This document shows, piece by piece, positions 21,020 to 118,274 of a DNA stretch of 124,000 nucleotides. The notes below the pieces were generated by a model. It was given only the letters and a program-made list of their open reading frames with translations. It did not search any database and was not told the DNA's origin. Source of the DNA: Octopus vulgaris. Its lineage: Eukaryota. A program made the translations under genes and the position numbers. How positions within the stretch are numbered: position 1 is the first letter of the stretch; every line of letters begins with the position of its first letter. Location of the stretch: positions 35,608,001 through 35,732,000 of the forward strand of contig OX597815.1 of assembly GCA_951406725.2 (NCBI GenBank), given 5' to 3'.

Positions 21020-21200
21020 CATGATAGACCGCTAACCATTATACATTCTTCATTTTCTCTCCTTGTTTCTTTTTGTGGAAGAGCGCAGGCTCGAAACGTT
21101 AAAAACTTTTTCACTTCCCGAGCGTTATACTAATACATCTGTTTGTTGTCTACACCACCTGCCTTCGTCTTAAATTTGTTTGTTTTTTGTGAATTCACCC

Positions 21201-42129: not shown

Positions 42130-44010
42130 GGGGATTTGGTTTACTTTCTCTGATCCTCTTTTCGTCGTGCGTAGGAACTTTCGCTTGTAGCGATGTGCTT
42201 TGGAATCCGGTGTATTTATAATTTATTCCGCGAGCGGATCTGATTTTTTATTCATTAAAGTACAGGTGCGTCTTGTTTTTCTGGTTGTCAAGTTTGTCGT
42301 TCTGCCTGGTTGGCTTCCTTGTGGGGTACGGGCATCAGTCTTTCCGGTTGATTGATTCTCTTAAAGTGTCATTTTGTTGTATTTGCTGATGTTCGGTTTC
42401 GATTTGTCTAGAGTTAGGCGACGTCAGCAACTAGCGTTTGTAAAATTTCATTGGTCTAGACATAGGTGACGTCGGCAATTGGTGTTTGTATGGTGATTTG
42501 GAGTTGCAGTTTCGAAACCCGGGTGGAAGACTTTTACTAAAGTATTTAAAATTGTTTGTTGTTCCTAGTTATTATTTTTGTTTTTGTGGAGAAATTGAAC
42601 CTTTTTCCCTTTTTCTCTTTAGTGTTTTTTCTTCTTTCTAAAGCTGTGCTTTATATTTTTTAATGAACACACTTTCCTTATTTAAACGGAATTGGGTTGA
42701 TAGAGAGGGAAGATATGGTATTTCAGGTTTATATTTACAGGGCATTGGTCTAGATGTTTGCTTACGGGAATTAGTCTGTCCCTCAAGGTTAAACTAATTT
42801 GACCTATGTAGTCTCCACCACACTCTCCACATTTGGGAACATAGACTAAGTTCTTCAAAGCACAGGGGAAGTGATTTTTTAATGGTAAAACTTTGACCTG
42901 ACCTAAATTTGTATGTTGAGCCCTCTAAGAGGAAGATGCAAGTTCTGCAGTTAGGGCGGTTGCGTATTTGGCTAATGAGGTTGTATTTTTGGTGGGTAAT
43001 TTGGCGCTGGTGAATAACTTTTTTTAGGGATTGCGGTTGTCTTTTGCTTTTAATAATCCAGTATTTCCAGTGCCTTTTCTATTCGTGGGTCCTTCATATG
43101 GAGGGGTATATTTTGGTGGGTGATGTTTTATGCTTCCATGTTCCTCAGAGTGTGTGTTGATATGAAAGATAAAGTTTTCAGTGTGTCATGGTGCCTTCTT
43201 GTTTTCCGTAATTCTTGGTTGTCTATCATTTTTGCGCATTCTATTCCGTTTTTTATTAGATTGGCCGGGTATTTTCTATCTAGTAATGTGTTTTTAAGTT
43301 CTTGGAGTCGCTTTTCTCGGGTTTCAGGATATGATGCAATCGTGCAAATTCTTCCAGCTAAGTTAAACGATATATTTATTTTAGTATGTTTTGGGTGGCA
43401 GGAGGAGAATAGAAGATATTGTTTTGAGACCGATGGTTTGAAGAAGATGTCGGTTTCAATCTTAGTATCTCTCTTTATTATTAAGATGGCCGGGAAGGGT
43501 AGTTGTTGGTGGTTGTATTCCATAGTGAATTGGATACTGTGATCAATGCTGTTGATTAAGTTTTTAAATTCTGTGAGTTGTTCAATGTTATGCGGCCAAA
43601 GGATGAAACAGTCATCCAGATAGCGTTTCCAGTTGGTAAGTAGGTATTTTTGGAAATTTTCCCCAAATTTTAATCTTGCGTGTTCGTATATTTGGACTTC
43701 CAAGTATGCCATGACAAGGTTGGCAAAAGTAGGTGCTACTCTCGTTCCCATCACCGTGCCCGATTTTTGTCTATAAGGGTTTTCGTTGAAATTGAAGAAG
43801 TTGTTCTGTAGAATGAACCTTATTCCTTCAACGATGAATTCTTTTCCAATTTGGTCAGGAAAGTCATTTGAGAATTTTTCAAGTCAGTATTGCTTGGCTA
43901 TTATTCCGAATTCGTGAGGAATCGAGGTGTAGAGGTTTATTACATCGAATGAAACCAGAAGGGAGTCCTTGCTGGTTTTGCTCGGGAGATACTTTAAAAA
44001 GTCCAGATCA
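42130..44010 (-). mobile_element. Penelope-like retroelement (RT plus degenerate GIY-YIG region)
   Basis: MGTRVAPTFANLVM, WKRYLDDCF and SSCHPKHTKINI Penelope RT motifs; downstream C-x2-C linker. Confidence 0.9.
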
Positions 44011-44089
44011 TCTCTTATAAAGCTTCGTATATGTTGGAGAATAGGTTTAAGGTGAAGATGCATATATATATATATATATTATTATTATA

Positions 44090-45012: not shown

Positions 45013-46275
45013 ATAACAGATCCTCTCATAAGTTCAGTTCGATTTTATCTTTTTTTTAATTGAATAAAATTTAATAGAATTTTAGAATATCTAATGGAAT
45101 TTAAAATTATTTTTATGCATTTGTGTACATTTAAACTAATTAAAAATTATTTTACAGAATAACAGAATTAAAATTTCTTTGATTAAAACCCTTTCTAACA
45201 TGGAAGTATCCAAAGAGCATTTGAGGCACATAATGCTTTATGAGTACAATAAAAGGAAACTCTGCAGCCGAGCAACTCGAAATATACACTCAGATTATGG
45301 GAAAGAATGCTTGAATCAAAGATGGTTTGCAAAATTCAGAAGTGGAGATTTCAACCTCAAAGATGAAGATCCAACAGGACTTCCCGTTGAGTTTGATGAT
45401 AAGCTCCTTAAGGTATTACTTGAAGAAAATCCTGCATTATCAGTTGAAGAATTTGGCAATAAAGCTTAGTTCAAACCACACAACTGTTCATCGTCATCTT
45501 CAACAACTTGGAAAGGTTCCTAAACTTGGAAAATGGGTGCCTCATGAATTGTCCGAAAACAACCGCAAATCCCGACTTGACATCTGCTCTTCTTTCCATT
45601 CCCGCGAACTCATTTCACCCTTTTTGGATAGACTTGTGACTGGTGACGAAAAGTGGATCTTCCATCGAAATGTTAAACGTTGTAAACAGTGGCTTGGTAA
45701 AAAGGAAAAAGTTCAACCACAACCGAGAAGGGAACTTTATGGGGAAAAGGTTCTTCTCTCTATCCGGTGGGATTGTAAAGGAGTAACTCACTTTGAATTG
45801 TTACCACCTAATGCAACAATCAAAGCCCAAGTCTACTGTCAGCAATTAGAGTATTTCAACCAAACTTTGAAGGAAAAGAGACCTGCTTTAGTGAATCGGA
45901 ATGGAGTGATGTTTCATGAGAACAATGCGCAACCCACACACAGAAGGTCGAAGAACTTGGGAAAAAATTCCTCATCCACCTTATTCTCCCGACCTTGCTC
46001 CTTCAGACTACCATTTGTTTCGTAGTTTACAGAATCATTTAGGGGACATAACTTTCGCAAGCCAGGAGGAGGTCGAAACTGACATTTCAGAGTTGTTCGC
46101 TTAGAAACCAAAAGAGTTTTACATTGATTGGCTTAAAAAGCTTGTAAGTAGATGGAAGGAAGTCATAGATAATCAGGGAAAGTACATTGATGATTAAATT
46201 TCGATTAAGTATAACATTTGACCACTTGTTTTCTTTATTCAAAATTCGGACAGAACTTATGGGATGACCTGATAT
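45013..46275 (+). mobile_element. Near-full-length degenerate mariner (DD34D)
   Basis: WVPHEL, VTGDEKW and YSPDLAPSDYHLF motifs; ~28-bp TIRs; frameshifted. Confidence 0.95.
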
Positions 46276-55260: not shown

Positions 55261-56288
55261 ACTGTGTAGTCAACAAAATCAAAAGCTAACAATGCGCATG
55301 CGTGAAATTAAAAATACAACAACGCGAGGACGTGGAACAAGTATAGTGTTACTGGGCGCTCATGAAAGGAAAGAAAGAAGGATTTAACGTTTCGAGCGGA
55401 GCTCTTCGTCATATATATAATGAAAGAATGGATATTACTAATGAGTGAAACGTAAACACACAAGAGATAAGTACAAGACAAAATTCCAAAAACATACGCA
55501 ATAAGTACAGGACATCACCAACGAGTGAAAAATACGTAGACACACGCGAGAAAAGTACAATGCAAAATACTAAAAGAAGATAATTCCTCATCAGTTGTCG
55601 GACTGTTTATTACTCCTATTTCATGCTTTTAATGACAATATAGGGACCTTCATAAGACAGCAGCATCCAGAAATTTAAAAAAAATTTTAATTTAAAAATT
55701 CATGGAAAGCCAGAGCTTCGAACGAATAAATAACGAAAGAGTGGACGTACAGAGTAAACAATCGACAAAGGGCTGTTAGGCCAAGACGAATCGTAATGAG
55801 TAATGCCTGGGAGAAATTTTATCAAGGAAATAGGATAACAGAAGGGAAGAAAATAGTAGAAGAGAATAATTAGAAGAGAAGAAAATAGTAGAAGAAAAAA
55901 ATTTCGAGAGTCGAGAAGAATTACATCCAACCCGATGAACGACCAGTCCAGAAAAGAAAGGGACAATAGAAATAGCCTGTAGTCACGTGTGAGTAACAGA
56001 GGTAGAGTGGAAGATGAACAAAAGAAATGATGAGGGAAAGAAACAAAAGAAGTGAGGAGAAGGGAGAAGGAACGACAGATAGTAGGGAGTGGAAGAAAGA
56101 CAGATAGGGGAAGCAAAGGTTATAGTGGGATAGAGAGAAAGAAAGAAAACAGTATGAAATCGCAGAAATTATGAATAAAAGTAAGAACTTGCTGTGGTCA
56201 AGGCTGCGTTGTTCTGTACACAATGTGTACTTTTCGTTTTATATATTCATAATTGAACGCCACGCAGTTTTGACCACAGTAAATTCTC

Positions 56289-56342: not shown

Positions 56343-59300
56343 GCATACCTCGTTTTACGTAACCCCGATTTACGAAACCTCAACTTTACGAATTGTTGAC
56401 GAGAAACAAAAACAAATGGTTAGTTACCATGGCAACGAGCGTCACTTCCGGCCTGGCAGCACTTGTTATCTCCAGCGATCGTCTGCAACTACTTTTTGGA
56501 TTTGAAGTGTGTCAGTGCCTGCCCGACTGGCTTCGCGCTAGCCTGCATTTTATCTTCCTTCATTCTATTCACTTCTTTATTTTTATTTTTATTTTTTACG
56601 CATTTTATTCTTTTGACTACCCTTGTGGTGGCTTCGAAAAGAAAGAATTCTGGAATGCAAAGCAAATATAAGAAGAAACGTAAAACAATTAATCTAGAAA
56701 TATAATACGGATTGATTAAACAACACGAAAAAGGTGCAACTTTTAAAGATTTATCAAAAAATTTGATATGGCTCCTTCATCTGTTTGTACCATCTTCAAG
56801 CCAAAAGAAAATTATTTCGATAAAGTTAAAGGATGTCATTCTCTAAATTCAACTTGGTTACGAAGAAGAGATAATGAAAGTTTAGTCTCACGCACAGAAA
56901 AACTTTTGACAGCTTGGATTAACGATCAAATTCATAGACGTCATATGCCACTTAGTCAGGCAATAATTGGTAGTAAAGCAATTTCACTTTTTAACTTGCT
57001 TAAGGATAAATCAGATGGATTAAATGAAGCCTTTTTAACAAGCAATGGTTGGTTCGATGGTTTCAAAAAAACAAGCAAATCTACACTTTTGCAATGGTTG
57101 GTTTGATGGTTTCAAAAAAACAAGCAAATCTACACTTTTGCAATGGTTGGTTTGATGGTTTCAAAAAAACAAGCAAATCTACACTTTTGCAATGGTTGGT
57201 TTGATGGTTTCAAAAAAACAAGCAAATCTACACTTTTGCAATGGTTGGTTTGATGGTTTCAAAAAAACAAGCAAATCTACACTTTTGCAATGGTTGGTTT
57301 GATGGTTTCAAAAAAACAAGCAAATCTACACTTTTGCAATGGTTGGTTTGATGGTTTCAAAAAAACAAGCAAATCTACACTTTTGCAATGGTTGGTTTGA
57401 TGGTTTCAAAAAAACAAGCAAATCTACACTTTTGCAATGGTTGGTTTGATGGTTTCAAAAAAACAAGCAAATCTACACTTTTGCAATGGTTGGTTTGATG
57501 GTTTCAAAAAAACAAGCAAATCTACACTTTTGCAATGGTTGGTTTGATGGTTTCAAAAAACAAGCAAATCTACACTTTTGCAATGGTTGGTTTGATGGTT
57601 TCAAAAAAACAAGCAAATCTACACTTTTGCAATGGTTGGTTCGATGGTTTCAAAAAACAAGCAAATCTACACTTTTGCAATGGTTGGTTTGATGGTTTCA
57701 AAAAAACAAGCAAATCTACACTTTTGCAATGGTTGGTTCGATGGTTTCAAAAAAACAAGCAAATCTACACTTTTGCAATGGTTGGTTTGATGGTTTCAAA
57801 AAAACAAGCAAATCTACACTTTTGCAATGGTTGGTTCGATGGTTTCAAAAAAACAAGCAAATCTACACTTTTGCAATGGTTGGTTCGATGGTTTCAAAAA
57901 ACAAGCAAATCTACACTTTTGCAATGGTTGGTTCGATGGTTTCAAAAAAACAAGCAAATCTACACTTTTGCAATGGTTGGTTTGATGGTTTCAAAAAAAC
58001 AAGCAAATCTACACTTTTGCAATGGTTGGTTCGATGGTTTCAAAAAAACAAGCAAATCTACACTTTTGCAATGGTTGGTTTGATGGTTTCAAAAAAACAA
58101 GCAAATCTACACTTTTGCAATGGTTGGTTCGATGGTTTCAAAAAAACAAGCAAATCTACACTTTTGCAATGGTTGGTTTGATGGTTTCAAAAAAACAAGC
58201 AAATCTACACTTTTGCAATGGTTGGTTCGATGGTTTCAAAAAAACAAGCAAATCTACACTTTTGCAATGGTTGGTTCGATGGTTTCAAAAAAACAAGCAA
58301 ATCTACACTTTTGCAATGGTTGGTTCGATGGTTTCAAAAAAACAAGCAAATCTACACTTTTGCAATGGTTGGTTTGATGGTTTCAAAAAAACAAGCAAAT
58401 CTACACTTTTGCAATGGTTGGTTTGATGGTTTCAAAAAAACAAGCAAATCTACACTTTTGCAATGGTTGGTTTGATGGTTTCAAAAAAACAAGCAAATCT
58501 ACACTTTTGCAATGGTTGGTTTGATGGTTTCAAAAAAACAAGCAAATCTACACTTTTGCAATGGTTGGTTTGATGGTTTCAAAAAAACAAGCAAATCTAC
58601 ACTTTGCAATGGTTGGTTTGATGGTTTCAAAAAAACAAGCAAATCTACACTTTTGCAATGGTTGGTTTGATGGTTTCAAAAAAACAAGCAAATCTACACT
58701 TTTGCAATGGTTGGTTTGATGGTTTCAAAAAAACAAGCAAATCTACACTTTTGCAATGGTTGGTTCGATGGTTTCAAAAAACAAGCAAATCTACACTTTT
58801 GCAATGGTTGGTTTGATGGTTTCAAAAAAACAAGCAAATCTACACTTTTGCAATGGTTGGTTTGATGGTTTCAAAAAAACAAGCAAATCTAAACAATGTA
58901 AAGATCCAAGGAGAATCGTCTAGCGGAGATCAAAAAGCCGCAGAAACAATTCCTCGCCAATTAGAAGATTTGGTTGAAGAAGAAGGCTGTCTCAAATATT
59001 TAATGTGGATAAAACGGGTCCATTTTGGAAACGAATGTCTTCAAGGATTTTTATTGCGAGAGAAAAATCTTCAAGGCCAGGATTCAAAGCTGCAAAAAAT
59101 GGGATAACATTGCTTCTGGGAGGAAATTTTGAAGAGGACTGCAAACTCAAGCTCATACTTAATTATCGATCTGAAAACACCCGTACTTTAGAAGGAATAG
59201 ACAAGACGAAACTTCCTATAATCTGGAAGCATAACAAAACAGTTTGGATGGCAGGAACTCTATTTGAAGATTGGTTTTCTTATCACTTTGTTCCCAAAAT

Positions 59301-60300
59301 GGAAAAAAATATTGTAAGGATAAATAATTCCTTTCAAGATTCTTTTGATAATGGATAGTGCTCCCAACCATGCTGCATTTTTAAAGCATCACCATCAAAA
59401 TATTAATGTTTTTTTTTTATACCTCCTAATACAACATCTTTATTGCAGCCTATGAATCAAGGAGTCATTTCATCGTTTAAATATTACTAATTCCTTTTCA
59501 CCTTTGAAAGACTCATCGGAGTGACTTATAAAGAAAATGGTTCTACGATTCAAGAATTTTGGAAGCGCTTCAACATCCTTGATGCAATAAAATTGATAAA
59601 GAAAGCATTGGATAAGATCGCCGTAAAGAACATGAAAGGAAATTGGAAAAATCTCTGTCCCAAATTAATTGACAATTTTGAAGGATTTGATAATCTTCAT
59701 GAAGGTCTTCAAAAAGAAACTGACACGCAAAGGAATCGAACTTAGAAATTTCACCTGAAGATATAAAAGAAGCTCTTTATGCTCACAGTGATGAAATTAC
59801 AAATGAAGAATTGCTAGAAATGAAGAAGTTTAAACGTGACAGAGAAGAAGAAGAAGAAGAAGAAGAAGAAGAAGAAGAAGAAGAAGAAGAAGAAGAAGAA
59901 GAAGAAGAAGAAGAAGAAGAAGAAGAAGAAGAAGAAGAAGAAGAAGAAGAAGAAGAAGAAGAAGAAGAAGAAGAAGAAGAAGAATGCCGGAGTGCATGAA
60001 ATCTTTGAGCAGCAAGGTGCCGATTTTGAAAGAAGCTCAACTGTTACTGCAAATTTAATGAGAGGTCATGCTTGTTATCGTGATATCTACTGTGAAATGA
60101 TGAAGAAATCTTTTCAACAAACAACTTTAGATAAGCTTTTAACGAAGAAAACTAATTCGGACCAAACAACAAAACAAAAAGAAACTCAACAAATGGAATT
60201 GACATGCTCTCAAGAGGCCCCAGTGACGTTAGACCCAATGGATACGAATTAAATTTCATGGGTTGAATATTTTGTTTTATAGGTTTTTCTATTTTTCATT
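56340..60300 (+). mobile_element. Tigger/pogo transposon, degenerate and interrupted by a satellite
   Basis: CENP-B HTH (HMPLSQAIIGSKA...FLTSNGWFDGFKK), MDKTGPFWKRM, MDSAPNH, PPNTTSLLQPMNQG; Tigger-like left TIR caagcatacctcg. Confidence 0.9.
57042..58891. repeat. 49-bp tandem satellite (~38 copies) inside the Tigger ORF
   Basis: Unit gcaatggttggtttgatggtttcaaaaaaacaagcaaatctacactttt; variants are mainly tt/tc and A-run length. Confidence 0.97.
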
Positions 60301-60520: not shown

Positions 60521-63500
60521 CTAGCAGAGATACCCGGCGTTGCCCGGTTACATTCAATAGAAGAATTAGACTTTTCTGTTATATATATATATATGGATAC
60601 ACAAACACATACACACACAAATATATGTATATTAATATAAATACATGAAAGTACATGAATTTTGTTAAAAAAAAGGGGATCTTGTATATACCTCCTGGCT
60701 GTTGAGATTATAACACCTCGTTGTAAACAATGTTCCTTGTTTTTCCTTGTGGAGCATATACAAGAAGGTTTCTTTTGGTTCCTACTCTTGAGCAGCCAAC
60801 ATACAGTTGCCTATGCGAGAAGCAGGGCTCTTCCAAGAGAAGACCAGCTACAGAGAGGGTTTGACCCTGAGATTTGTTAATGGACATGGCAAAGCTGACA
60901 CGAAGGGGGAATTGCAGTCTTCTGAATGTAAATGGAATTTCTGCTCCTGATGGAGTAAGAGGAAATCTTGGAATAAAGACGTCATCACCTTTTCCACATC
61001 CAGAAAGAATGATCGCCTCGATAACGTGTGATATCATTTTCTTTATCACCAGTCGTGTTCCATTGCAAAGTCTTGGTGGTTCCAGATTGCGGAGTAGCAT
61101 TACAGGAGTTCCAACTTTAAGTGGTAATATGTGTGGAGGTAGTCGAAGAGGCTCCAGTGAATTGAGAAATTCAGGAGGATAGTTCACAACTTCATTTATA
61201 TCTGGAATTGTATCAACAGACTTGTAAGTGTGTCTAGTGCCGGGAAGAGAATGCATTAGCTGTTGATTAATTTTGTTAACAGCGACGTTTTTTGGAGCTA
61301 ATATGGCTCTTTCACACCGCCAATTGTGATTTTGGTAGTTTTGTGTGAAGTTGGGAAAGACTTTGTTTTTGAGGTCATCTACAGAATGAACAACAGAGGA
61401 AAATGACCACATGTTCCATTTGTCCTGCAGCATCGAGAGGCATCTTGCCTTCACCAAGTGTCAAAATGTCGTGTGCAAACTTTGTGGACATTTTGTCGCC
61501 TTGTAGCTGAGCTCTCATGTTAGTGGTGAGACTAAAGATTGCAACATGATGACATAGGGTAGAGGACTTTAGGCATGCTTGAACTTCATCAGCTCTAGTG
61601 CCTTTCGGAATGATAGGAAGAGTTTGCCTGAAATCACCTGACAACAGAAGCGTTACACCTCCCATTGGAGCCTGACAGTCACGGATGTCTTTCAGGGTTC
61701 TATCTAATGCTTCCAAAGCTCCCTTGTGAGCCATAGTGCACTCAGCCAGACAATTACATAACACATTTTAAGTACTTGTCCCTGATCTGAGCTTTTGTTG
61801 ATGTTGCATGAGAGGGAGTTTAAAAGTTGAGTGTGCTGTCCTGCCACCGGGTAACAAAGTAGCTGCAATGCCAGAGGAGGCTACAGCTACTGCAATGTCC
61901 TGATGCTACCTAACTTCTGCAAGGAGAAGCTTTGTAATAAATGTTTTTTCTGTCCCTCCAGGAGCACCGAGGAAGAAGATTGGTCCCTCGCGTTGGCGTA
62001 CACTGTTAAGAATAGTTCTGTAGGCCTGCAGCTGGTCCGGAAGTAATTTAGGCTCATTTTCAACAATGTACTTTGAAAGCGCTTGAGTGTCGTAGGTTGT
62101 TTCACGAATGACAGCAGTGGGAAGGCTATTTGACCTTGACCTGAATGCTTATGGCAGGCCATACGTCGACAATTCATTTCCACCCAGTTTATCAATTCTG
62201 TCTTCAACGTCAATGAGTGTTTTGTTATAGATTTCATTGCTGATACCCTCCATGTCAGGATAGAGCAGTTGAGCTTGGCGCTGAAGGGGACAATGTTTTT
62301 GAGATTCCGGTTCGAATGTAAGGCAGGATTGAAAGTGTTCCCAACAGTTATTAGTTGTAGTGGTAGAGTGTTTATGCCGAATATGTACGTATGTATATAT
62401 ATGTATGCATGCCTGTATATATGTACAAAATCCACTGAGAAGGCTTTTGATGGTCTGAAGCTACAGCAGAAGACACATGCCAAGTCACCACACAGTGGGA
62501 CCGAACCCAGGACCATGTGTTTGGAACGTAGTTTGTTACCACACAGCCACACCTGCCCCTACGTATGTGTGTGTGTGTGCGTGTGTGTTATGGGTAGATA
62601 TGTTATGCATGTATATATGTGTATATATATGTGTACATATTACATGTACATCTATATATATACATCTACACATAAAATACAAAATACAAAGTTATATCAT
62701 GATATCGCTAGTGATAACAATACTCAAAATATATAACAGACTGGAATTGTAGGCCCGTCTCTTGCAATTTCGATCAATTGGATCTTGTCCTCCCTCTTGT
62801 ATAGAAGTGTACGGCTGCAGCGAAATTCAATTTTGGACTTTCTTCTTTCGAAGGCATTTTAACAAAAATGCTTCCGTAAAGACAGTGAAAATATTGTCAA
62901 TTACCCCAAACAGGGACATAATTCAATTTTTAAACAATAACCAAAGCCCCTTCTCCGAAAGGGGGAGGGTTACGGTTTACAATTATTTAACAAATGCAAC
63001 ACAACAACGTTTCCCTGACGAGGAACCAACAAACGTGATTACAATAGTCAAACAGTAATAATAATAACAACAAACCTTTTTAATTTATCCCCATTTATGT
63101 GAAACCGCTTATTCAAGTTCAAGTCATTGATGCAATTTTATACGAATTGCTAATACACACACACACACACACACACACACATAATAAGAGTGAAAAATTG
63201 AATATTAATTTGATTAATATGAATTGAAAACCAGTGGTGTAGCATATAAGACCATAGCGGATCTTCCTCTAGCAAAAAGGATGACAACTATTAATGGCTC
63301 ATCCCTGTTATATAATACTTTCACTTTAATAGTTTCACACTTGCAAAGAGAAAGTGTGGTGGTAATAGCAGGAGTAAACCACTTGAAATGAGAGAGGCAA
63401 ATCGTAAAATATTGAGTTTTCTTGAATTTTTGCTTAATTGAGGGTCAAACTGAAAAAATTTATATGCCATGACCCAATCGAATCTACTTCGAAAAATCAT

Positions 63501-68935: not shown

Positions 68936-68938
<3 letters not shown>

Positions 68939-69923
68939 CATTCATACTTTGAATTTGGTGATACTAGCTGTGGCTTCTAGCTCGCTCTGATACTGAGTTG
69001 AGTTGGTGCCTTCTAGTATCTCAAAATTCAATATTCAATCATTCATGATTGTTAGTATCCTGCGCTGATGAAAGAAGAAGTCTGGGTAAAGTAGAGTTAT
69101 CTAATTCTTATGATTTCCTAAGACTTGATCTCGAAACGTACGTCCGTAGGTGACTTAAAACTGTATGATAGATTGCCGTTAATTCATTCTCTTTTACCTG
69201 TTTGTGTTTGCCTTTCAAATGCTGTGCCTTTACTGTGATCTCCCTTTTAGTAGAAGAAATAGCTATAATCTCTTTGACTGCTATTTCTAAATTCGGTGTG
69301 TGGTAAGGCAATTCGTTGCTAAACCCTTAATTGCTTAGTATTACTTAAATTTTCCTCGAATGAGGCTTTTACATGCCGAAGACTACTTGGTGTAATTGAT
69401 AATTGTTCCAAATTAATTAATTTCACCCTTCATTGTTACTCATAAACCATATTCATCCCAGTAAATGACCACAGCACTTTGTCCTGGCTACACGCGGGTG
69501 GGAAGGGACTGGTGACACAAGCTTTCATTCATACTTTGAATTTGGTGATACTAGCTGTGGCTTCTAGCTCGCTCTGATACTGAGTTGAGTTGGTGCCTTC
69601 TAGTATCTCAAAATTCAATATTCAATCATTCATGATTGTTAGTATTCTGCGCTGATGAAAGAAGAAGTCTGGGTAAAGTAGAGTTATCTAATTCTTATGA
69701 TTTCCTAAGACTTGATCTCGAAACGTACGTCCGTAGGTGACTTAAAACTGTATGATAGATTGCCGTTAATTCATTCTCTTTTACCTGTTTGTGTTTGCCT
69801 TTCAAATGCTGTGCCTTTACTGTGATCTCCCTTTTAGTAGAAGAATAGCTATAATCTCTTTGACTGCTATTTCTAAATTCGGTGTGTGGTAAGGCAATTC
69901 GTTGCTAAACCCTTAATTGCTTA

Positions 69924-69927
<4 letters not shown>
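68936..69927. repeat. Direct duplication of ~405 bp bracketed by (TA)n
   Basis: 68936-69341 is nearly identical to 69523-69927. Confidence 0.9.
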
Positions 69928-77582: not shown

Positions 77583-80500
77583 ATACTTTGATACTTTGAT
77601 ACTTTGATAGGTTTCGGCCATTATTGGCCCAGGCCATGTCTAACTTAATAGCACCACCTGGTGAAGTCTTTCAAGTCAGAATTTGGGCACTATGGCCCAC
77701 TCAAGTAGAGAGTTATTGTTTGCAGAGACATATCCGGGTGTAGGGGGTTTATCCGGGATTTCTTGAAAGAATCTGTCCAAAGACTTCTTGAACCCTATAG
77801 GGTCAGTTTCTGTTTTAATGTGTTTTGGTGTAATGTTAAAGAGAGCGGGGCCAATTGAGGTGAAATAATTGTGCCGTATTGTTGTTATGAGATGAGAGTG
77901 CGATTTTTGTTTTGGGCGGATGGCACGGGGCCCAAGCCTTGGATGTACCTTAAAGGTGATGCCAACATCATTTGGGCAATGCTGATGGAATATTTTCCAC
78001 ATCATGCAGATGATGTAGCGCTCACGACGACGTTGGAGAGAATAGAGTTTTAGCTTTTCTAGTCGACCCCAATAGTCGAGGCCTGTCATGCCATCTATCT
78101 TTTTTGTGATTGCCCTTTGAGGTGCTTCAACTTTTATGATACCTTGTATTGTGTGGGGAGACCACAGTGGACAACAGTATTCAAGGTGGGGTCGGACAAA
78201 AGTGGAGAAGAGAAGGATAATGGTGTGGATATCTCTCGACTGGAAAGTTCTGAGAATCCAGGAACACATTCTGCGGGCCATGTCAACTTTGGTGTTTATA
78301 TGAGTGGCCCAGCTTACGTTGTTGTCCACAATTACTCCCAAGTCTCTGATGTTGTTGGACGCCGCGAGAGTTTCACCTGAAGGAAGGGAGTATGGGAGTT
78401 TCAGGGCATCCTCTTTTCCAAAGTGGATTAGCTCAAATTTATCCTCGTTCAGCAGCATATTGTTTTTTTCTGCCCATTGGATAACAGCCAGTAGATCTGA
78501 CTGAAGGCATGTCCGGTCACCCGCCTCATTTATGACCTTCTGTAGCTTGGAGTCATCTGCAAAGATTTTTATGTTGCTGTGCTTGATGATGTCATTAATG
78601 TCATTAATGTAAATGATGAAAAGAAGTGGGCCCAGCACAGTGCCTTGCGGAACGCCACTACTGACTTTGGCTGGGCTTGATTTTACCCCTTCAACTACAA
78701 CATGTTGAGATCTGTCTGTCAGGAAACACTTAATCCATTTCAGTAACTTTCCAGAGACACCAATGTTGGATAGTTTTTTCAATAGGATCTTGTGATCGAC
78801 CCTGTCGAAGGCCTTACTGAAATCAAGGTAGATGACATCGGTGTTGGAGCCCTCTCCCAAAGCTCTCAAAATGTCCTCAAAGTGATGCAGGAGCTGCGTT
78901 AGGCAGTCCCTTCCATTACGGAACCCATGTTGGTTGGAGATCAGCCGTCTGTTGCTTTCCAGAAATTGGGTTATTCGAGATCTCACCACCCTCTCAAATA
79001 CCTTGATGATATGAGAGGTGAGTGAGATCGGACGGTAATTCACTGCAAGGGACTTGTTTCCCTTTTTGAAAACTGGGACAACAGACTGGGACAGAAGGTT
79101 TTTTGGAATATAGCCAGCATCCAGTGAGTTTCTCCACAGATTAGCAAGGGGAGATGCAAGTTGGTGTCGACACACCTTCAGGACACAAGCAGGGAACCTA
79201 TCGGGGCCTACTGCTGAATTGTGTTTTATTTCGTTTATCGCCGCTAAGACATCAGGGGCACTAAATGTTATGTCCGATATAGTGTGTTGGGGGTTGACAT
79301 CACTGATACAGCCCAGATCGGCCATATCAGGATTGCTGAAAACAGAGCAGTATTGTTTCTGCAGTATCTCGGCCATGGATTTGGCATTATCTTGGAGAGT
79401 GCCAGTTTCGTCAATTAGAGGGCCTACAGTGGAGACAGTGACCCTGCGTTTCCTCGCAAATGAAAAGAACACTTTGGGGTTGAGTTTGATTTTTTCAATG
79501 GCCCACTTCTCCTCAGCTGATCTTTGGTTATTGATGAGGGTCTTCATGCATTGTTGGAGGTTATATTTTTTGGATTCAAGCAGTGCGATAGCCGTCGAAT
79601 GTGTGTGCTGCTGTTGGCAGTACTTTAGTTTGTTAATTTTTTTGTTTGTTCTTTTTATTTTTCTGATAATGGTTTTTCTGTTTTGGGGGATTCTGCACTT
79701 TTTGTTCACAGGTCTTGGTGGGGAGTGTTTTGCACATATGTCTGTGACGGTGTCTACAAAGATCTGCCAAGATGTTTTATGGTTGGTGGAGATGTGTGTA
79801 TGTGTAAAGGACCAGTCAACATTTGATAGCTCGTTCCTGATTGCATCCCAGTTGGCTTTATGGAGATCCATGTTGTCAAATGGGTGGGCTGGAGGAAGGT
79901 CACTAGGATTAGCTTTCGGCTGGTGGAATTTCATGTTACAGAGAACCATGTCATGGTCTGAAAGAAGGGTTTTTTCCACTGTAACGTTATGTATAGTGTT
80001 AGTGTGGTTACTAAACACTAGGTCCAAAATGTTCTGATGTCTTGTTGGTGCAAGGACAAGTTGGGACAAGAAAAACTCATTCGTAAAGTCGAAAAGTGAC
80101 TCTGCTGCTTCTTTGTCAGCGGTTGAGGCGGGAGTGCTTGGTTTCAAACAGTTTGTAGTCCAGTCAACACAGGGTAGATTGAAGTCTCCCATCATGAGTA
80201 TGTTGCTAGAATGGCACTGTTGAATAAAGCACTTAATGCTGTTGAGGCATTCTTTAAAGCACAGTATGGGTGTTTGGGGCGGCCTATAGAGCCCAATTAC
80301 TGTCAGGTCATTGGCTTTGTTGTGCACGGTGACTGATTCACAGTAGCCGTTGGAGAATATACTATTTCCATCTGCCGTAAATGAATCATGCAGGAAAATG
80401 GCAGTTCCACCCTTCCTCCTGCCGATACGATCCGCGCGGATGGTTGTGAAATTCTTCACTCTCACTTCGGCTTCCAAGTGGGAGTTGTCAAGGTGGGTCT

Positions 80501-80906
80501 CAGTGAGAATGAAGAAAGGGATGTGGTGTGAATGGTTACCAACCCAGTCTTCAATGAATTGGACCTTCCATTTTTGTGCATTGATGGAAGGGCTGACACC
80601 TTGTGCATTGAGTAGGAATGTGGAGGTTAGTGTAGTGGCTGGTTTTGACTGTTGCAGGGGGCTTGGATTTTGTGTGTGTGTTAGTGGCAGCAATGTGGGG
80701 AATTGGTGCACTGGGGTAATAGCATAGGATGGTGTTGAGTGATGGCTAGAATGTTTTTGTGTATCTCTTTTGCCATGTTCAACATGGCTAAAAAGAATTT
80801 TCCTGCTTAGGGAGCAGTTTTTGGCTGGAGGTGTGGTTGCACTGTTGGATAGGGTTGTAGTTTCCACTTTTGTTGTTGTTGTTTTTGTGTCTTCCTGAAA
80901 AGACAC
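77583..80906 (-). mobile_element. CR1-like LINE with uninterrupted ORF2 (APE endonuclease plus RT), 5'-truncated
   Basis: No stop from ~80906 to 77676; [45 protein letters not shown]; 8-mer tandem tail (ATCAAAGT)n. Confidence 0.97.
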
Positions 80907-81045
80907 ATATATATATACATATATATACATATACATATAAATATATATATATATACATACATATACATATATATACATATATATATATATATATATTGTA
81001 TACATATATATATATGTATATATATTATATATATATATATATATG

Positions 81046-90844: not shown

Positions 90845-91033
90845 GGGAGAATTCACGAAAAAAACAAAAGACGAAGACAGATGGTGTAGAAAACTAATAG
90901 ATGTATTAGTATAACCCTCGGGAATTGAAAAAGTCTTTTACGTTTCGAGCCTACGCTCTTCCATAGAAAGGAACACAGAAAGAAACAAGGAGAGAAAAAA
91001 ATGTGTGTAGTGGCTAACGATCAATCATGGTGA

Positions 91034-91037
<4 letters not shown>
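90845..91037 (-). mobile_element. ~190-bp (TA)n-embedded element with minimal hammerhead-like motif (family also at 21018-21200, 92756-92920, 118068-118275)
   Basis: ctttct(a/g)tggaAgagc-loop-gctcGAAAcgt(a/t)aaag is conserved between copies. Confidence 0.65.
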
Positions 91038-91072
<35 letters not shown>

Positions 91073-91227
91073 CATAAGGGACTAAAGCCATCTGAATATG
91101 GCTAGGGACAGGGCAGGGTGGTGGGGGTGTTACTGTTGCATTTAGCCCCAGGCGAACATCGACGTCACCAGAAAGGCTCGACACCGTCACGGTGCCCTAA
91201 ACCTGCAAAGGGAGGTAATTCCCCGAT

Positions 91228-91301
91228 GAAGCGGAAACCACACACGGACCATGGTTTCAAGGTGTATTGCCTATCATCGGCGTGTGGTAGGCCTCCGCTT
91301 C
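91228..91301 (-). ncRNA. Type I hammerhead ribozyme fold, copy 1 (copy 2 at 91587-91660)
   Basis: Reverse complement of the fold described at 92073-92146. Confidence 0.7.
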
Positions 91302-92072
91302 CTCGACGAATTCTCACTATGCAGGATTTCTTATATAGATTTTCAAGCAAAATACATTTGCTGATTTCGAAAATCTGTTCGAAAGCAATAATAATTCTCT
91401 AAAAGGGATATAGACAGTAACTGCTCGATAACATAAGGGACTAAAGCCATCTGAATATGGCTAGGGACAGGGCAGGGTGGTGGGGGTGTTACTGTTGCAT
91501 TTAGCCCCAGGCGAACATCGACGTCACCAGAAAGGCTCGACACCGTCACGGTGCCCTAAACCTGCAAAGGGAGGTAATTCCCCGATGAAGCGGAAACCAC
91601 ACACGGACCATGGTTTCAAGGTGTATTGCCTATCATCGGCGTGTGGTAGGCCTCCGCTTCCTCGACGAATTCTCACTATGCAGGATTTCTTATATAGATT
91701 TTCAAGCAAAATACATTTGCTGATTTCGAAAATCTGTTCGAAAGCAATAATAATTCTCTAAAAGGGATATAGACAGTAACTGCTCGATAACATAAGGGAC
91801 TAAAGCCATCTGAATATGGCTAGGGACAGGGCAGGGTGGTGGGGGTGTTACTGTTGCATTTAGCCCCAGGCGAACATCGACGTAACACCCCCACCACCCT
91901 GCCCTGTCCCTAGCCATATTCAGATGGCTTTAGTCCCTTATGTTATCGAGCAGTTACTGTCTATATCCCTTTTAGAGAATTATTATTGCTTTCGAACAGA
92001 TTTTCGAAATCAGCAAATGTATTTTGCTTGAAAATCTATATAAGAAATCCTGCATAGTGAGAATTCGTTGAG

Positions 92073-92146
92073 GAAGCGGAGGCCTACCACACGCCGATGA
92101 TAGGCAATACACCTTGAAACCATGGTCCGTGTGTGGTTTCCGCTTC
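92073..92146 (+). ncRNA. Type I hammerhead ribozyme fold (variant core CCGAUGA)
   Basis: Stem I CACACG/CGUGUG extended by GAAGCGGA/UCCGCUUC; core CCGAUGA; stem II AGG/CCU; GAAA; palindromic stem III ACCAUGGU; GUC site, predicted cut 92127/92128. Confidence 0.72.
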
Positions 92147-92347
92147 ATCGGGGAATTACCTCCCTTTGCAGGTTTAGGGCACCGTGACGGTGTCGAGCCT
92201 TTCTGGTGACGTCGATGTTCGCCTGGGGCTAAATGCAACAGTAACACCCCCACCACCCTGCCCTGTCCCTAGCCATATTCAGATGGCTTTAGTCCCTTAT
92301 GTTATCGAGCAGTTACTGTCTATATCCCTTTTAGAGAATTATTATTG

Positions 92348-92397
<50 letters not shown>

Positions 92398-92928
92398 GAG
92401 TAAAAAATTGTTAAATGATTTATTACCAGTGGTCTTCATGTACAATAAAAGTTATAAGACGCAAAATATTTGTTTTTAGAGTGTATAAATTACACGAGGA
92501 GAAAACCATCTTACATGCTGGAAAGGGCTGTCGCAATCTAAACCACGAATAAAATTCTTAAAGCACATTGCTTGTGTGCACTAGAATGAATAAAAATTCA
92601 GTAAACCTTATACTCATGAGTTTCATTATTAAGAATTTATTTCGTGGTTTGGGTTGTGACTGCCCTTTCCAACATTTAAGAAGCCCTATCGATGGTCGTT
92701 TCTTAGTGTATTTATACGCTCTTATAAACATGTATATATATATATATATATATACGCTAGCCACTACACATTTTTTATTTTCTCTCCTTGTTTCTTTCTG
92801 TGTTCCTTTCTGTGGAAGAGCGTAGGCTCGAAACGTTAAAGACTTTTTCATTTCCCGAGCATTATACTAATACAGCTGTTTGTTGTCTACACCACCTGTC
92901 TTCGTCTGGGAATTCCCCCTATATGTAT

Positions 92929-96131: not shown

Positions 96132-96166
96132 GTTTCTGACGAAGAGCTCCGCTCGAAACGTTAAAT
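96132..96166 (+). ncRNA. Minimal hammerhead-like motif with intact CUGACGA core (copies at 55381-55411, 115872-115906, 117085-117119, minus strand)
   Basis: GUUU-CUGACGA-A-GAGC(UCC)GCUC-GAAA-CGUU-AAAU. Confidence 0.65.
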
Positions 96167-115389: not shown

Positions 115390-117850
<2,461 letters not shown>

Positions 117851-118069: not shown

Positions 118070-118274
118070 ATGTTGATTCGCTAGCTTCTGCACGCATTTT
118101 TTTTCTCTCCTTGTTTCTCTCCGTGTTTCTTTTCTGTGTATCTTTCTGTTGAAGAGCGTAGACTCGAAACGTAAAAGACTTGTTTTATTTATATTCCTGA
118201 GCGCCATACTAATACAATTGTTTGTTTGTATTCCACCTGCCTTCGTCTTTTGTTTATTTTCATAAAGCTTCCCG

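What the first reader, a model, noticed from the sequence alone, without database searches (positions are those of the whole stretch)
91071..92349. Candidate octopus retrozyme: 359-bp tandem repeat with one hammerhead fold per unit
Seen: near-identical 359-bp units (starts 91071, 91430, 91789), non-coding and (TA)n-flanked; each full unit folds into a type I hammerhead. Known: metazoan non-LTR retrozymes (e.g. mussel, coral, axolotl) are tandem repeats of a few hundred bp with one type I hammerhead per unit; they yield self-cleaved monomers and circular RNAs and are thought to borrow Penelope RT. Inference: a minus-strand transcript would be cut at 91606/91605 and 91247/91246, releasing an exact 359-nt monomer that could circularise. 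Penelope remnants occur in the same window. I am not aware of such a system described in cephalopods but cannot check.
Basis: partly seen in the sequence, partly recalled or inferred. Interest (0 to 1): 0.92.

Follow-up and report, generated by a model that had tools for sequence, protein, structure and literature searches.

The report
Hammerhead-bearing retroelement repeat in octopus DNA
A very young 359-bp repeat, inserted into a TA microsatellite partly head-to-tail and partly flipped, carries a hammerhead-like self-cleaving RNA motif with one changed catalytic base; it looks like a cephalopod relative of the known animal "retrozymes", copied in by Penelope-type machinery.

Summary
The 359-bp period, the unit starts, the 100% identity and the (TA)n flanks are real. 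The array is not three direct units, though. It holds 2.27 direct units (91071-91883), then 1.30 units in reverse orientation (91882-92349), which makes a 468-bp near-perfect inverted repeat.

Each full unit carries a type I hammerhead-like motif, twice on the minus strand and once on the plus strand. Its build matches retrozyme hammerheads shown to cleave: 6-bp helix I, 4-position helix II, GAAAC, palindromic helix III (ACCAUGGU) and a GUC cut site. The catalytic core reads CCGAUGA, not CUGAUGA (U4 to C). Rfam gives no hammerhead match. A model I built from coral, mussel and axolotl retrozyme hammerheads ranks the three copies top in the window, but only at 18 bits.

A partial tandem plus an inverted 5'-truncated copy, set in (TA)n, is the published insertion signature of Penelope-like elements. 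A Penelope RT-endonuclease remnant and Penelope-type minimal hammerheads lie in the same window.

Best reading: a recent retrozyme-like insertion with a weakened or dead ribozyme. Read-through transcripts would form a long hairpin rather than release monomers.

A second tandem locus (587-bp unit, 68936-69927) has a canonical hammerhead core.

Copy number, stem covariation and cleavage could not be tested.

The parts
91037..91071 (.). Left (TA)17 microsatellite flank; target of the insertion
   Evidence: TRF. The junction shares ATA with the unit.
91071..91883 (-). Direct arm: 2.27 units of 359 bp (91071-91429, 91430-91788, 91789-91883). The hammerhead-sense strand is the minus strand, so its 3' end abuts the left (TA)n and its 5' end lies at the centre.
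91239..91288 (-). Hammerhead-like motif of unit 1; predicted cut between 91247 and 91246
   Evidence: Descriptor. CM R1 18.0 bits. Stays unsequestered in the read-through fold.
91598..91647 (-). Hammerhead-like motif of unit 2: helix I CACACG/CGUGUG, core CCGAUGA, helix II UAGG/CCUU with loop CAAUACA, GAAAC, helix III AC-CAUG-GU, GUC. Predicted cut between 91606 and 91605.
   Evidence: Lies inside the inverted-repeat arm and is sequestered in the read-through fold.
91852..91881 (.). 30-nt spacer (unit offsets 64-93) between the inverted-repeat arms
91882..91883 (.). Inversion junction: the GT dinucleotide is shared by the end of the direct arm (offset 95) and the start of the inverted arm (offset 63)
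91882..92349 (+). Inverted arm: 1.30 units, reverse complement of 91384-91851. The hammerhead-sense strand is the plus strand, and its 3' end abuts the right (TA)n.
92086..92135 (+). Hammerhead-like motif of the inverted arm; predicted cut between 92127 and 92128
92069..92069 (.). The only difference between the arms. T here on the plus strand, where the complement of G91664 would give C: a CpG to TpG change in the hammerhead-sense strand.
92349..92394 (.). Right (TA)23 microsatellite flank
   Evidence: TRF. 1-nt (T) junction overlap.
90869..91016 (-). Flanking short element with a degenerate Penelope-type minimal hammerhead (CUAUGGA...GAGC-GUAG-GCUC-GAAACGUA), bounded by (TA)n
92756..92920 (+). 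Inverted partner of the flanking element, with a degenerate minimal hammerhead (CUGUGGA core), bounded by (TA)n

Best explanation
**What it is.** This is a very young insertion of a small, non-coding, hammerhead-derived retroelement of the metazoan non-LTR retrozyme kind. It was copied into a (TA)n microsatellite by target-primed reverse transcription of the Penelope-like-element type.

**How it was inserted (inferred).**
- An RNA longer than one unit served as template. It was either an uncleaved multimer or a circular monomer copied round and round.
- The two 3' ends of a break in the (TA)n tract primed on AU-rich stretches of that RNA. Microhomologies are ATA on the left and T on the right.
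- One cDNA ran 2.27 units and the other 1.30 units.
- Their 5' ends were joined head-to-head at a 2-nt GT microhomology.
- The result is a partial tandem plus an inverted 5'-truncated copy.

**What is shown.** The anatomy, the junctions, the hammerhead-shaped motif in each unit, the stable fold of the motif-bearing strand, and Penelope remnants in the window.

**What is inferred about function.**
- The motif descends from a real type I hammerhead.
- The U4-to-C change in the catalytic core makes cleavage weak, perhaps negligible.
- At this locus a monomer (cuts at 91606/91605 and 91247/91246) would be released only from transcripts that start inside the left arm.
- Read-through transcripts of either strand fold into a ~467-bp double-stranded hairpin. 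That would be a likely substrate for RNA-silencing or editing enzymes.
For: **Array anatomy**
- Period 359; the two full direct units are identical.
- 468-nt inverted repeat with a 30-nt spacer. The single difference is CpG to TpG, as expected of real, slightly aged paralogous copies.
- Junction microhomologies are ATA, GT and T. Sense-strand 5' ends meet at the centre and 3' ends abut (TA)n.

**Match to the Penelope insertion signature**
- The same paper reports (TA)n microsatellite bias and multicopy head-to-tail insertions of non-autonomous elements (PMC8557442).

**Hammerhead motif**
- It has a 6-bp helix I, 4-position helix II, GAAAC, palindromic ACCAUGGU helix III and GUC.
- This is the plan of the coral, mussel and axolotl retrozyme hammerheads that cleave in vitro (sequences in the PMC7229834 supplement; general description in PMC4209133).
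- A U.U at the base of helix II occurs in axolotl HHR_Amex2 and in other natural hammerheads.
- The descriptor finds only these three sites in the window. 3 of 20,000 unit shuffles match.
- CM R1, built without this sequence, ranks them top in the window (18.0 bits).

**RNA properties**
- GC 46.8%; circular MFE -113.3 kcal/mol, z -4.3, 67% paired.
- Pairing of two copies through helix III is favoured by about 7 kcal/mol.

**Penelope context**
- An RT plus C-terminal GIY-YIG remnant lies at 42641-44066 (-). Homologues are in Octopus sinensis, O. bimaculoides and Argonauta.
- Minimal hammerhead elements lie at 96136 and 117115 and flank the array.
- A second (TA)n-flanked tandem, with a canonical-core hammerhead, lies at 68936-69927.
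Against: - Core position 4 is C. U4C 'considerably decreases activity in vitro' (PMC3088659). It also fails the CUGANGA filter used to define retrozyme hammerheads.
- Rfam Hammerhead_1 gives nothing even in a 96-nt query, although it scores the 587-unit hammerhead at 17.1 bits.
- My CM score is modest. A probable false positive at 59481-59527 scores 17.5 bits.
- All copies are identical, so there is no covariation.
- No other copy exists in the window, and none turned up in the pattern scans or the protein-handle search.
- In the thermodynamic fold of the 78-nt domain, a rod (-33.7 kcal/mol) beats the hammerhead fold (-15.2 kcal/mol).
- In the read-through fold the unit-2 motif is buried in the hairpin.
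- Neighbouring minimal-hammerhead elements have spread with a dead core (CUGUGGA in three copies), so a hammerhead-shaped relic need not be functional.
- No 30-40-bp Penelope 'tail' is seen.
Confidence: 0.62

Rival explanations
1. The repeat is a mobile or satellite sequence with no ribozyme ancestry. On this view the hammerhead shape is a chance resemblance, helped by relaxing core position 4.
For: - No Rfam hammerhead match at any threshold tried.
- The strict CUGANGA descriptor finds nothing.
- A similar CM score (17.5 bits) occurs at an unrelated site.
- The first-stage scan looked at many windows. By extrapolating the measured rate of 1 hit per 40 shuffled windows to a genome of assumed gigabase size, a relaxed motif would occur by chance hundreds of times genome-wide; the genome size is my assumption, not a measurement.
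Against: - Only 3 of 20,000 shuffles of this unit give the relaxed motif.
- The motif also has features the descriptor did not require. These are a palindromic helix III, a GUC site, a 7-bp distal extension of helix I beyond an internal loop, and a position on the better-folding strand.
- It sits in a tandem unit of retrozyme size, inserted in Penelope fashion, in a window with two other hammerhead families.
Confidence: 0.13
2. The array arose at the DNA level, without reverse transcription. A pre-existing tandem repeat underwent a fold-back inverted duplication by replication template switching.
For: - An inverted duplication with a short spacer and 2-nt microhomology at the turn is also what replication fold-back events produce (established knowledge, not tested here).
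- Identity is near-perfect.
Against: - The inverted arm ends inside a unit and abuts (TA)n directly. The array starts at (TA)n on the other side.
- This fits a single insertion into one microsatellite. It also fits the published Penelope pattern.
- A second, unrelated hammerhead tandem 22 kb away is also bounded by (TA)n on both sides.
- This view does not explain how the first tandem came to lie in (TA)n.
Confidence: 0.12
3. The inverted half, or the perfect identity of the units, is an assembly artefact such as a chimeric or fold-back long read.
For: - Identity between the arms is 100% and 99.8%.
- The literature notes that Penelope tandem/inverted structures cause assembly problems.
- No reads are available to check.
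Against: - The palindrome is not symmetric. There is a 30-nt spacer, the arms measure 813 and 468 nt, and the flanks differ.
- The one difference is a CpG-to-TpG transition, not an indel.
Confidence: 0.06

Closest known systems
Metazoan non-LTR retrozymes (Cervera and de la Pena 2020, PMC7229834), e.g. mussel Mg353 and axolotl Ax353
   Same: - Non-coding tandem unit of a few hundred bp (mussel 350-390 bp) and GC below 50%.
- One type I hammerhead-shaped motif per unit, with a 6-bp helix I, a short helix II and a palindromic short helix III.
- A U.U at the base of helix II, as in axolotl HHR_Amex2.
- Stable self-paired RNA.
- Penelope-like elements in the same genome.
   Different: - The core has C at position 4 instead of U.
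- Rfam does not recognise the motif.
- This locus is a partial tandem joined to an inverted copy.
- Expression, circles, cleavage and genomic copy number are unknown.
- No sequence similarity to the published units beyond the motif.
Penelope-like element insertions and their non-autonomous derivatives (Craig et al. 2021, PMC8557442; Li et al. 2026 preprint, 10.64898/2026.07.22.740005)
   Same: - Partial tandem plus an inverted 5'-truncated copy adjoining the 5' end.
- Insertion in a (TA)n microsatellite, so no target-site duplication can be read.
- A hammerhead motif in the repeated part.
   Different: - No RT/endonuclease ORF in the element.
- No detectable similarity to the Penelope remnant or the minimal-hammerhead elements of this window.
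- The hammerhead has the canonical retrozyme build, not the minimal Penelope type.
- No 30-40-bp tail.
Natural U4C hammerhead variant of a viroid (cited in Perreault et al. 2011, PMC3088659)
   Same: The same core substitution, in an otherwise complete hammerhead within a small, highly structured RNA.
   Different: - The viroid variant was shown to retain enough activity in vivo. Nothing has been tested here.
- Different hammerhead type and different host kingdom.
Amphibian satellite 2 and Schistosoma type I hammerheads that act as dimers (PMC4209133)
   Same: - Weak helix III with a palindromic loop that can extend to an 8-bp intermolecular helix.
- Tandem genomic arrangement.
   Different: Those have the canonical CUGANGA core and their cleavage has been demonstrated.

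Membership tests
Metazoan non-LTR retrozyme | Canonical catalytic centre CUGANGA / GAAAY / RUH in the hammerhead of each unit (criterion stated in the PMC7229834 supplement) | tested here: not met
   GAAAC and GUC are present, but the first box reads CCGAUGA in all three copies.
Metazoan non-LTR retrozyme | Type I topology with helices I, II and III of typical size (6 bp; 4 bp; 1-2 bp with a palindromic loop) | tested here: met
   Helix I is 6 bp. Helix II has 3 bp plus a U.U. Helix III has 2 bp plus CAUG. Compared with the description in PMC4209133.
Metazoan non-LTR retrozyme | Short tandem repeats of 150-450 bp in multiple copies | tested here: met
   Period 359. There are 2.27 direct plus 1.30 inverted units.
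Metazoan non-LTR retrozyme | Non-coding, no LTR, GC below 50% | tested here: met
   GC is 46.8%. The longest ORF (94 aa) has no homologue. No terminal repeats other than the units themselves. PBS and PPT were not searched for.
Metazoan non-LTR retrozyme | Highly self-paired RNA | tested here: met
   Linear MFE -119.9 kcal/mol, z -5.1. Circular MFE -113.3 kcal/mol, z -4.3, 67% paired.
Metazoan non-LTR retrozyme | Dispersed family with many genomic copies | not testable with these tools
   No cephalopod genome collection is on hand. There is only one locus in the 124-kb window, and pattern scans of the metagenome and viral collections were empty.
Metazoan non-LTR retrozyme | Self-cleavage and accumulation of linear and circular monomer RNA | not testable with these tools
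   Needs transcription assays, northern blots and RNA-seq.
Metazoan non-LTR retrozyme | Co-existence with autonomous Penelope-like elements | tested here: met
   An RT plus C-terminal GIY-YIG remnant lies at 42641-44066 (-). Only a degraded copy was seen in this window.
Hammerhead ribozyme type I (Rfam RF00163) | Score at or above the family's gathering score (34 bits) | tested here: not met
   No match at gathering, none at E<=10 in 1.6 kb, and none in 96 nt. As a control, the 587-unit hammerhead reaches 17.1 bits.
Hammerhead ribozyme type I (Rfam RF00163) | Conserved core nucleotides C3 U4 G5 A6 G8 A9 G12 A13 A14 A15.1-U16.1 H17 | tested here: not met
   All are present except U4, which is C.
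Hammerhead ribozyme type I (Rfam RF00163) | Stems supported by covariation | not testable with these tools
   The three copies are identical in the motif, and no homologues could be obtained.
Penelope-type insertion | Partial tandem with an inverted 5'-truncated copy adjoining the 5' end | tested here: met
   Definition from PMC8557442.
Penelope-type insertion | Insertion into a microsatellite, (TA)n for several clades | tested here: met
   (TA)17 and (TA)23 directly abut both ends.
Penelope-type insertion | 30-40-bp tail at one end | tested here: not met
   Both ends pass directly from unit sequence to (TA)n. The source describes the tail as frequent, not universal.

The most novel reading that the evidence does not exclude
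The U4C hammerhead is active enough in vivo, so this is a live cephalopod retrozyme family. On that reading this near-zero-age insertion would be structural evidence that retrozyme RNAs are integrated by Penelope-type target-primed reverse transcription. The evidence is the partial tandem plus inverted 5'-truncated copy, primed from (TA)n ends on AU-rich stretches. In addition, the head-to-head locus would act as a hairpin-RNA source that feeds silencing or A-to-I editing of the family.
Probability: 0.15. Interest if true: 0.7.

Novelty: new variant of a known kind. Interest (0 to 1): 0.45.

Why it matters
- **Who mobilises animal retrozymes.** Penelope-like elements have been proposed as the mobilisers, mainly on co-occurrence and, recently, on phylogeny of the pseudo-LTR. 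A fresh insertion that shows the peculiar Penelope insertion anatomy, in a TA microsatellite, would be direct structural support. It would also give a concrete locus to test, for example by looking for an empty site in relatives or for polymorphism.
- **Reach of the family.** It would extend retrozyme-like elements to cephalopods.
- **The core change.** It raises the question whether a U4C core can serve an animal element, or whether such elements, like the CUGUGGA minimal-hammerhead elements next to it, spread without a working ribozyme.
- **If the motif is dead.** The locus is then an ordinary young repeat insertion.

Tried and rejected
- **Rfam.** The scan at gathering score over the whole window found nothing. 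E-value scans around the array returned only microRNA-like matches at 91810-91925. These are artefacts of the perfect inverted repeat.
- **ORF as a search handle.** I used the unit's 94-aa ORF to fish other copies out of the protein collection. It gave no hit.
- **Pattern scans.** Exact-pattern scans of the metagenome and viral contigs for the unit's hammerhead gave nothing. A looser pattern (GATGA...TGAAACCATGGTC) returned 120 loci, mostly chance. Three (L014, L024, L115) are canonical type I hammerheads with the same helix III but are unrelated otherwise.
- **RT remnant at 10123-11457.** I considered it as the 'Penelope remnant' and rejected it. Its motifs and C-terminal region look LINE-like. 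The real Penelope remnant lies at 42.6-44.1 kb.
- **Axolotl Ax330.** It was dropped from the model alignment because MAFFT misaligned its helix II.
- **CM R1 with default filters.** It missed the array. Only the unfiltered search scored it.
- **Similarity between units.** No significant similarity was found between the 359-bp and 587-bp units (best blastn match 27 nt, E 0.029). The 359-bp unit also found no other match in the window (best outside the array E 0.036), so it is not similar to the minimal-hammerhead elements.
- **CM hit at 59481-59527.** It was judged to be chance, with several non-pairs and no helix III.

Full report
**1. The observation**

Tandem Repeats Finder reports a 359-bp period with 2.3 copies and 100% matches at 91069-91883. 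It also reports (TA)17 at 91037-91071 and (TA)23 at 92349-92394. Units 91071-91429 and 91430-91788 are identical.

The array does not continue as a third direct unit.
- The direct run ends at 91883 (unit offset 95).
- From 91882 to 92349 the sequence is the reverse complement of 91384-91851.
- That is 468 nt with one mismatch and a 30-nt spacer.

The structure is therefore 2.27 units in one orientation joined head-to-head to 1.30 units in the other. The single difference between the arms is G91664 against T92069 on the plus strand. This is a CpG-to-TpG change on the strand that carries the motif. No other copy of the unit exists in the 124-kb window.

**2. The hammerhead-like motif**

The motif lies on the minus strand of the two full direct units and on the plus strand of the inverted unit. 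The RNA reads:

CACACG-CCGAUGA-UAGG-CAAUACA-CCUU-GAAAC-CAUG-GUC|CGUGUG

Its parts are:
- a 6-bp helix I, continued after an internal loop by 7 more pairs (GAAGCGG/CCGCUUC);
- a helix II of three pairs above a U.U;
- a helix III of two pairs capped by CAUG, so that ACCAUGGU is palindromic.

The cuts would fall at 91606/91605, 91247/91246 and 92127/92128.

This plan matches the one described for metazoan type I hammerheads: helix I 6 bp, helix II 4 bp, helix III 1-2 bp with a small palindromic loop (PMC4209133). It also matches the coral, mussel and axolotl retrozyme constructs that cleave in vitro, whose sequences I took from the supplement of PMC7229834. The U.U at the base of helix II is known from axolotl HHR_Amex2 and from other natural hammerheads.

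One thing does not fit. Core position 4 is C, not U. [quoted passage not shown]

**3. More than chance?**

*Own descriptor*
- The strict descriptor (CUGANGA) finds nothing in the window.
- Relaxing position 4 finds exactly the three array sites in 248 kb of window sequence (both strands).
- The relaxed descriptor hits 3 of 20,000 dinucleotide shuffles of the unit and 1 site in 40 shuffles of the whole window.

*Rfam 15*
- It gives no hammerhead match at gathering score, at E<=10 over 1.6 kb, or in a 96-nt query.
- As a control, Rfam Hammerhead_1 scores the canonical-core hammerhead of the 587-bp unit at 17.1 bits. It misses the Penelope-type minimal hammerhead at 96136 altogether.

*Own covariance model*
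- I built the model from the coral, mussel and axolotl Ax353 hammerheads, without the octopus sequence.
- With filters off it places the three array motifs at the top of the window (18.0 bits, E about 0.008 per 62 kb).
- A probable false hit at 59481-59527 reaches 17.5 bits, so this support is modest.

Taken together, the motif is very unlikely to be chance at this locus. It is, however, a deviant hammerhead, and its activity is open.

**4. RNA properties**

| Property | Value |
|---|---|
| GC of the unit | 46.8% |
| Minus-strand RNA fold | -119.9 kcal/mol, z -5.1 |
| Plus-strand RNA fold | z -2.6 |
| Monomer folded as a circle | -113.3 kcal/mol, z -4.3, 67% paired |
| Pairing of two motif copies through helix III | favoured by about 7 kcal/mol |
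| 78-nt domain, rod-like alternative | -33.7 kcal/mol |
| 78-nt domain, hammerhead fold | -15.2 kcal/mol |

The rod beating the hammerhead fold is usual for viroid-like RNAs. It means cleavage would have to be co-transcriptional.

A read-through minus-strand transcript of the whole block folds into a 467-bp perfect hairpin. In that fold the unit-2 motif is fully sequestered and only the unit-1 motif stays free.

**5. How it got there**

The 3' ends of the motif-bearing strands abut the (TA)n tracts on both sides, and their 5' ends meet at the centre. The junctions carry microhomologies of ATA (left), GT (centre) and T (right).

Craig et al. (PMC8557442) describe Penelope-like insertions as follows:
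- 5'-truncated partial tandems;
- often with an inverted 5'-truncated copy adjoining the 5' end;
- a bias for microsatellites, (TA)n in several clades;
- non-autonomous derivatives that give multicopy head-to-tail insertions.

The locus matches all of this except the optional 30-40-bp tail.

I infer target-primed reverse transcription from both ends of a break in (TA)n. The template would be an RNA longer than one unit, either an uncleaved multimer or a circle. This step is inference. A DNA-level fold-back duplication gives a similar centre but explains the (TA)n boundaries less well.

An assembly artefact is unlikely for three reasons: the palindrome is asymmetric, it has a spacer, and the only difference is a CpG transition. 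It cannot be excluded without reads.

**6. Context**

- *Penelope remnant.* A degraded Penelope-like element lies at 42641-44066 (-). It has the C-terminal half of the RT followed by a GIY-YIG endonuclease region. Its homologues are in Octopus sinensis (90% over part), O. bimaculoides (61%) and Argonauta hians, and several of them carry PF01541. This also supports an octopod origin of the window.
- *Minimal hammerheads.* Penelope-type minimal hammerheads with a canonical core (CUGACGA-AGAGC..GCUC-GAAACGUU) lie at 96136 (+) and 117115 (-).
- *Flanking elements.* A sister subfamily has the core CUGUGGA (A6 replaced). It occurs at 21044, 90915 (-) and 92781 (+). The last two flank the array in inverted orientation, each itself bounded by (TA)n. 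So this microsatellite has been hit repeatedly, and hammerhead-derived elements with a dead core have still spread here.
- *Second tandem.* A second, unrelated tandem lies at 68936-69927. Its period is 587 bp with 1.69 copies that differ by one substitution and one 1-bp indel over 405 bp, and it is bounded by (AT)18 and (TA)19. It carries a type I hammerhead with the canonical CUGAUGA core, a long helix II and the palindromic helix III ACGUACGU.

**7. Comparison with what is known, and novelty**

In function and anatomy the closest kind is the metazoan non-LTR retrozyme. Most of its descriptive features are met: tandem unit size, non-coding, low GC, self-paired RNA, type I topology, and Penelope elements alongside.

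The strict catalytic-core criterion and the Rfam threshold are not met. Copy number, expression and cleavage could not be tested. I therefore file it as a retrozyme-like variant, not as a confirmed member. It may simply be a decayed copy of a canonical family.

I found no paper describing retrozymes in cephalopods. Type I hammerhead matches have been counted in the giant squid genome, 235 of them (PMC6962438). Retrozyme-like repeats are reported as widespread in invertebrates, including a mollusc. A specialist would not be very surprised by the element itself.

The more useful aspect is the near-zero-age insertion with Penelope-style anatomy. It bears on who mobilises retrozymes.

**8. Verdict**

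- Best explanation: a young retrozyme-like insertion made by Penelope-type machinery, with a weakened or dead U4C hammerhead. Confidence about 0.6.
- Interest is moderate.

Noticed in passing
window 68936-69927: A second hammerhead tandem. The period is 587 bp with 1.69 copies that differ by one substitution and one 1-bp indel, bounded by (AT)18 and (TA)19. The plus strand carries a type I hammerhead with the canonical CUGAUGA core, a long helix II (~61 nt), GAAAC, palindromic ACGUACGU and GUC (69057-69152 and 69644-69739). Rfam Hammerhead_1 scores it 17.1 bits, below gathering. It is unrelated in sequence to the 359-bp unit and is a better candidate for an active retrozyme.
   Followed up: partly
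window 96136-96162 (+), 117115-117089 (-), also 115852-115932 (-), 55362-55442 (-): Penelope-type minimal hammerheads (GUUU-CUGACGA-A-GAGC-UCC-GCUC-GAAACGUU|AAAU) in short dispersed elements. Rfam does not detect them.
   Followed up: partly
window 21044-21124 (+), 90915-90995 (-), 92781-92861 (+), element also at 118114-118248: A sister subfamily of about 165-bp elements, bounded by (TA)n. Their minimal hammerhead has CUGUGGA (A6 replaced by U) or further decay. A hammerhead-derived element appears to have spread with a dead core.
   Followed up: partly
window 42641-44066 (-): [quoted passage not shown] Best homologues are in Octopus sinensis, O. bimaculoides and Argonauta hians.
   Followed up: yes
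window 77676-81005 (-): An uninterrupted 1109-aa ORF with apurinic-type endonuclease and reverse transcriptase domains. This is a possibly intact LINE and another conceivable source of reverse transcriptase.
   Followed up: no
window 10123-11457 (+), 45327-46022 (+), 59005-59355 (+), 60711-61457 (-): Other transposon remnants: a LINE-like RT in pieces, a mariner-type transposase fragment, a DDE_1 transposase fragment and a Pif1-helicase fragment (Helitron-like).
   Followed up: no
window 92395-92732: A 338-bp segment bounded by (TA)n on both sides, with an internal 53-bp inverted repeat (92509-92561 and 92629-92681). It is possibly another microsatellite-targeted insertion. No hammerhead was found in it.
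   Followed up: no
window 91810-91925: Sub-threshold Rfam matches to many microRNA families (best 57.6 bits to mir-4776, gathering 97). They are produced by the centre of the perfect inverted repeat and are not evidence of a microRNA gene.
   Followed up: yes
loci L014, L024, L115 (metagenome contigs OFFA01019883.1, Ga0099805_1272795 and the contig held as L115): Canonical type I hammerheads (GGCAA-CUGAUGA-GAUCC...GGAUU-GAAAC-CAUG-GUC-UUGCC) share the same palindromic helix III as the octopus motif but are otherwise unrelated. The source organisms were not examined.
   Followed up: no
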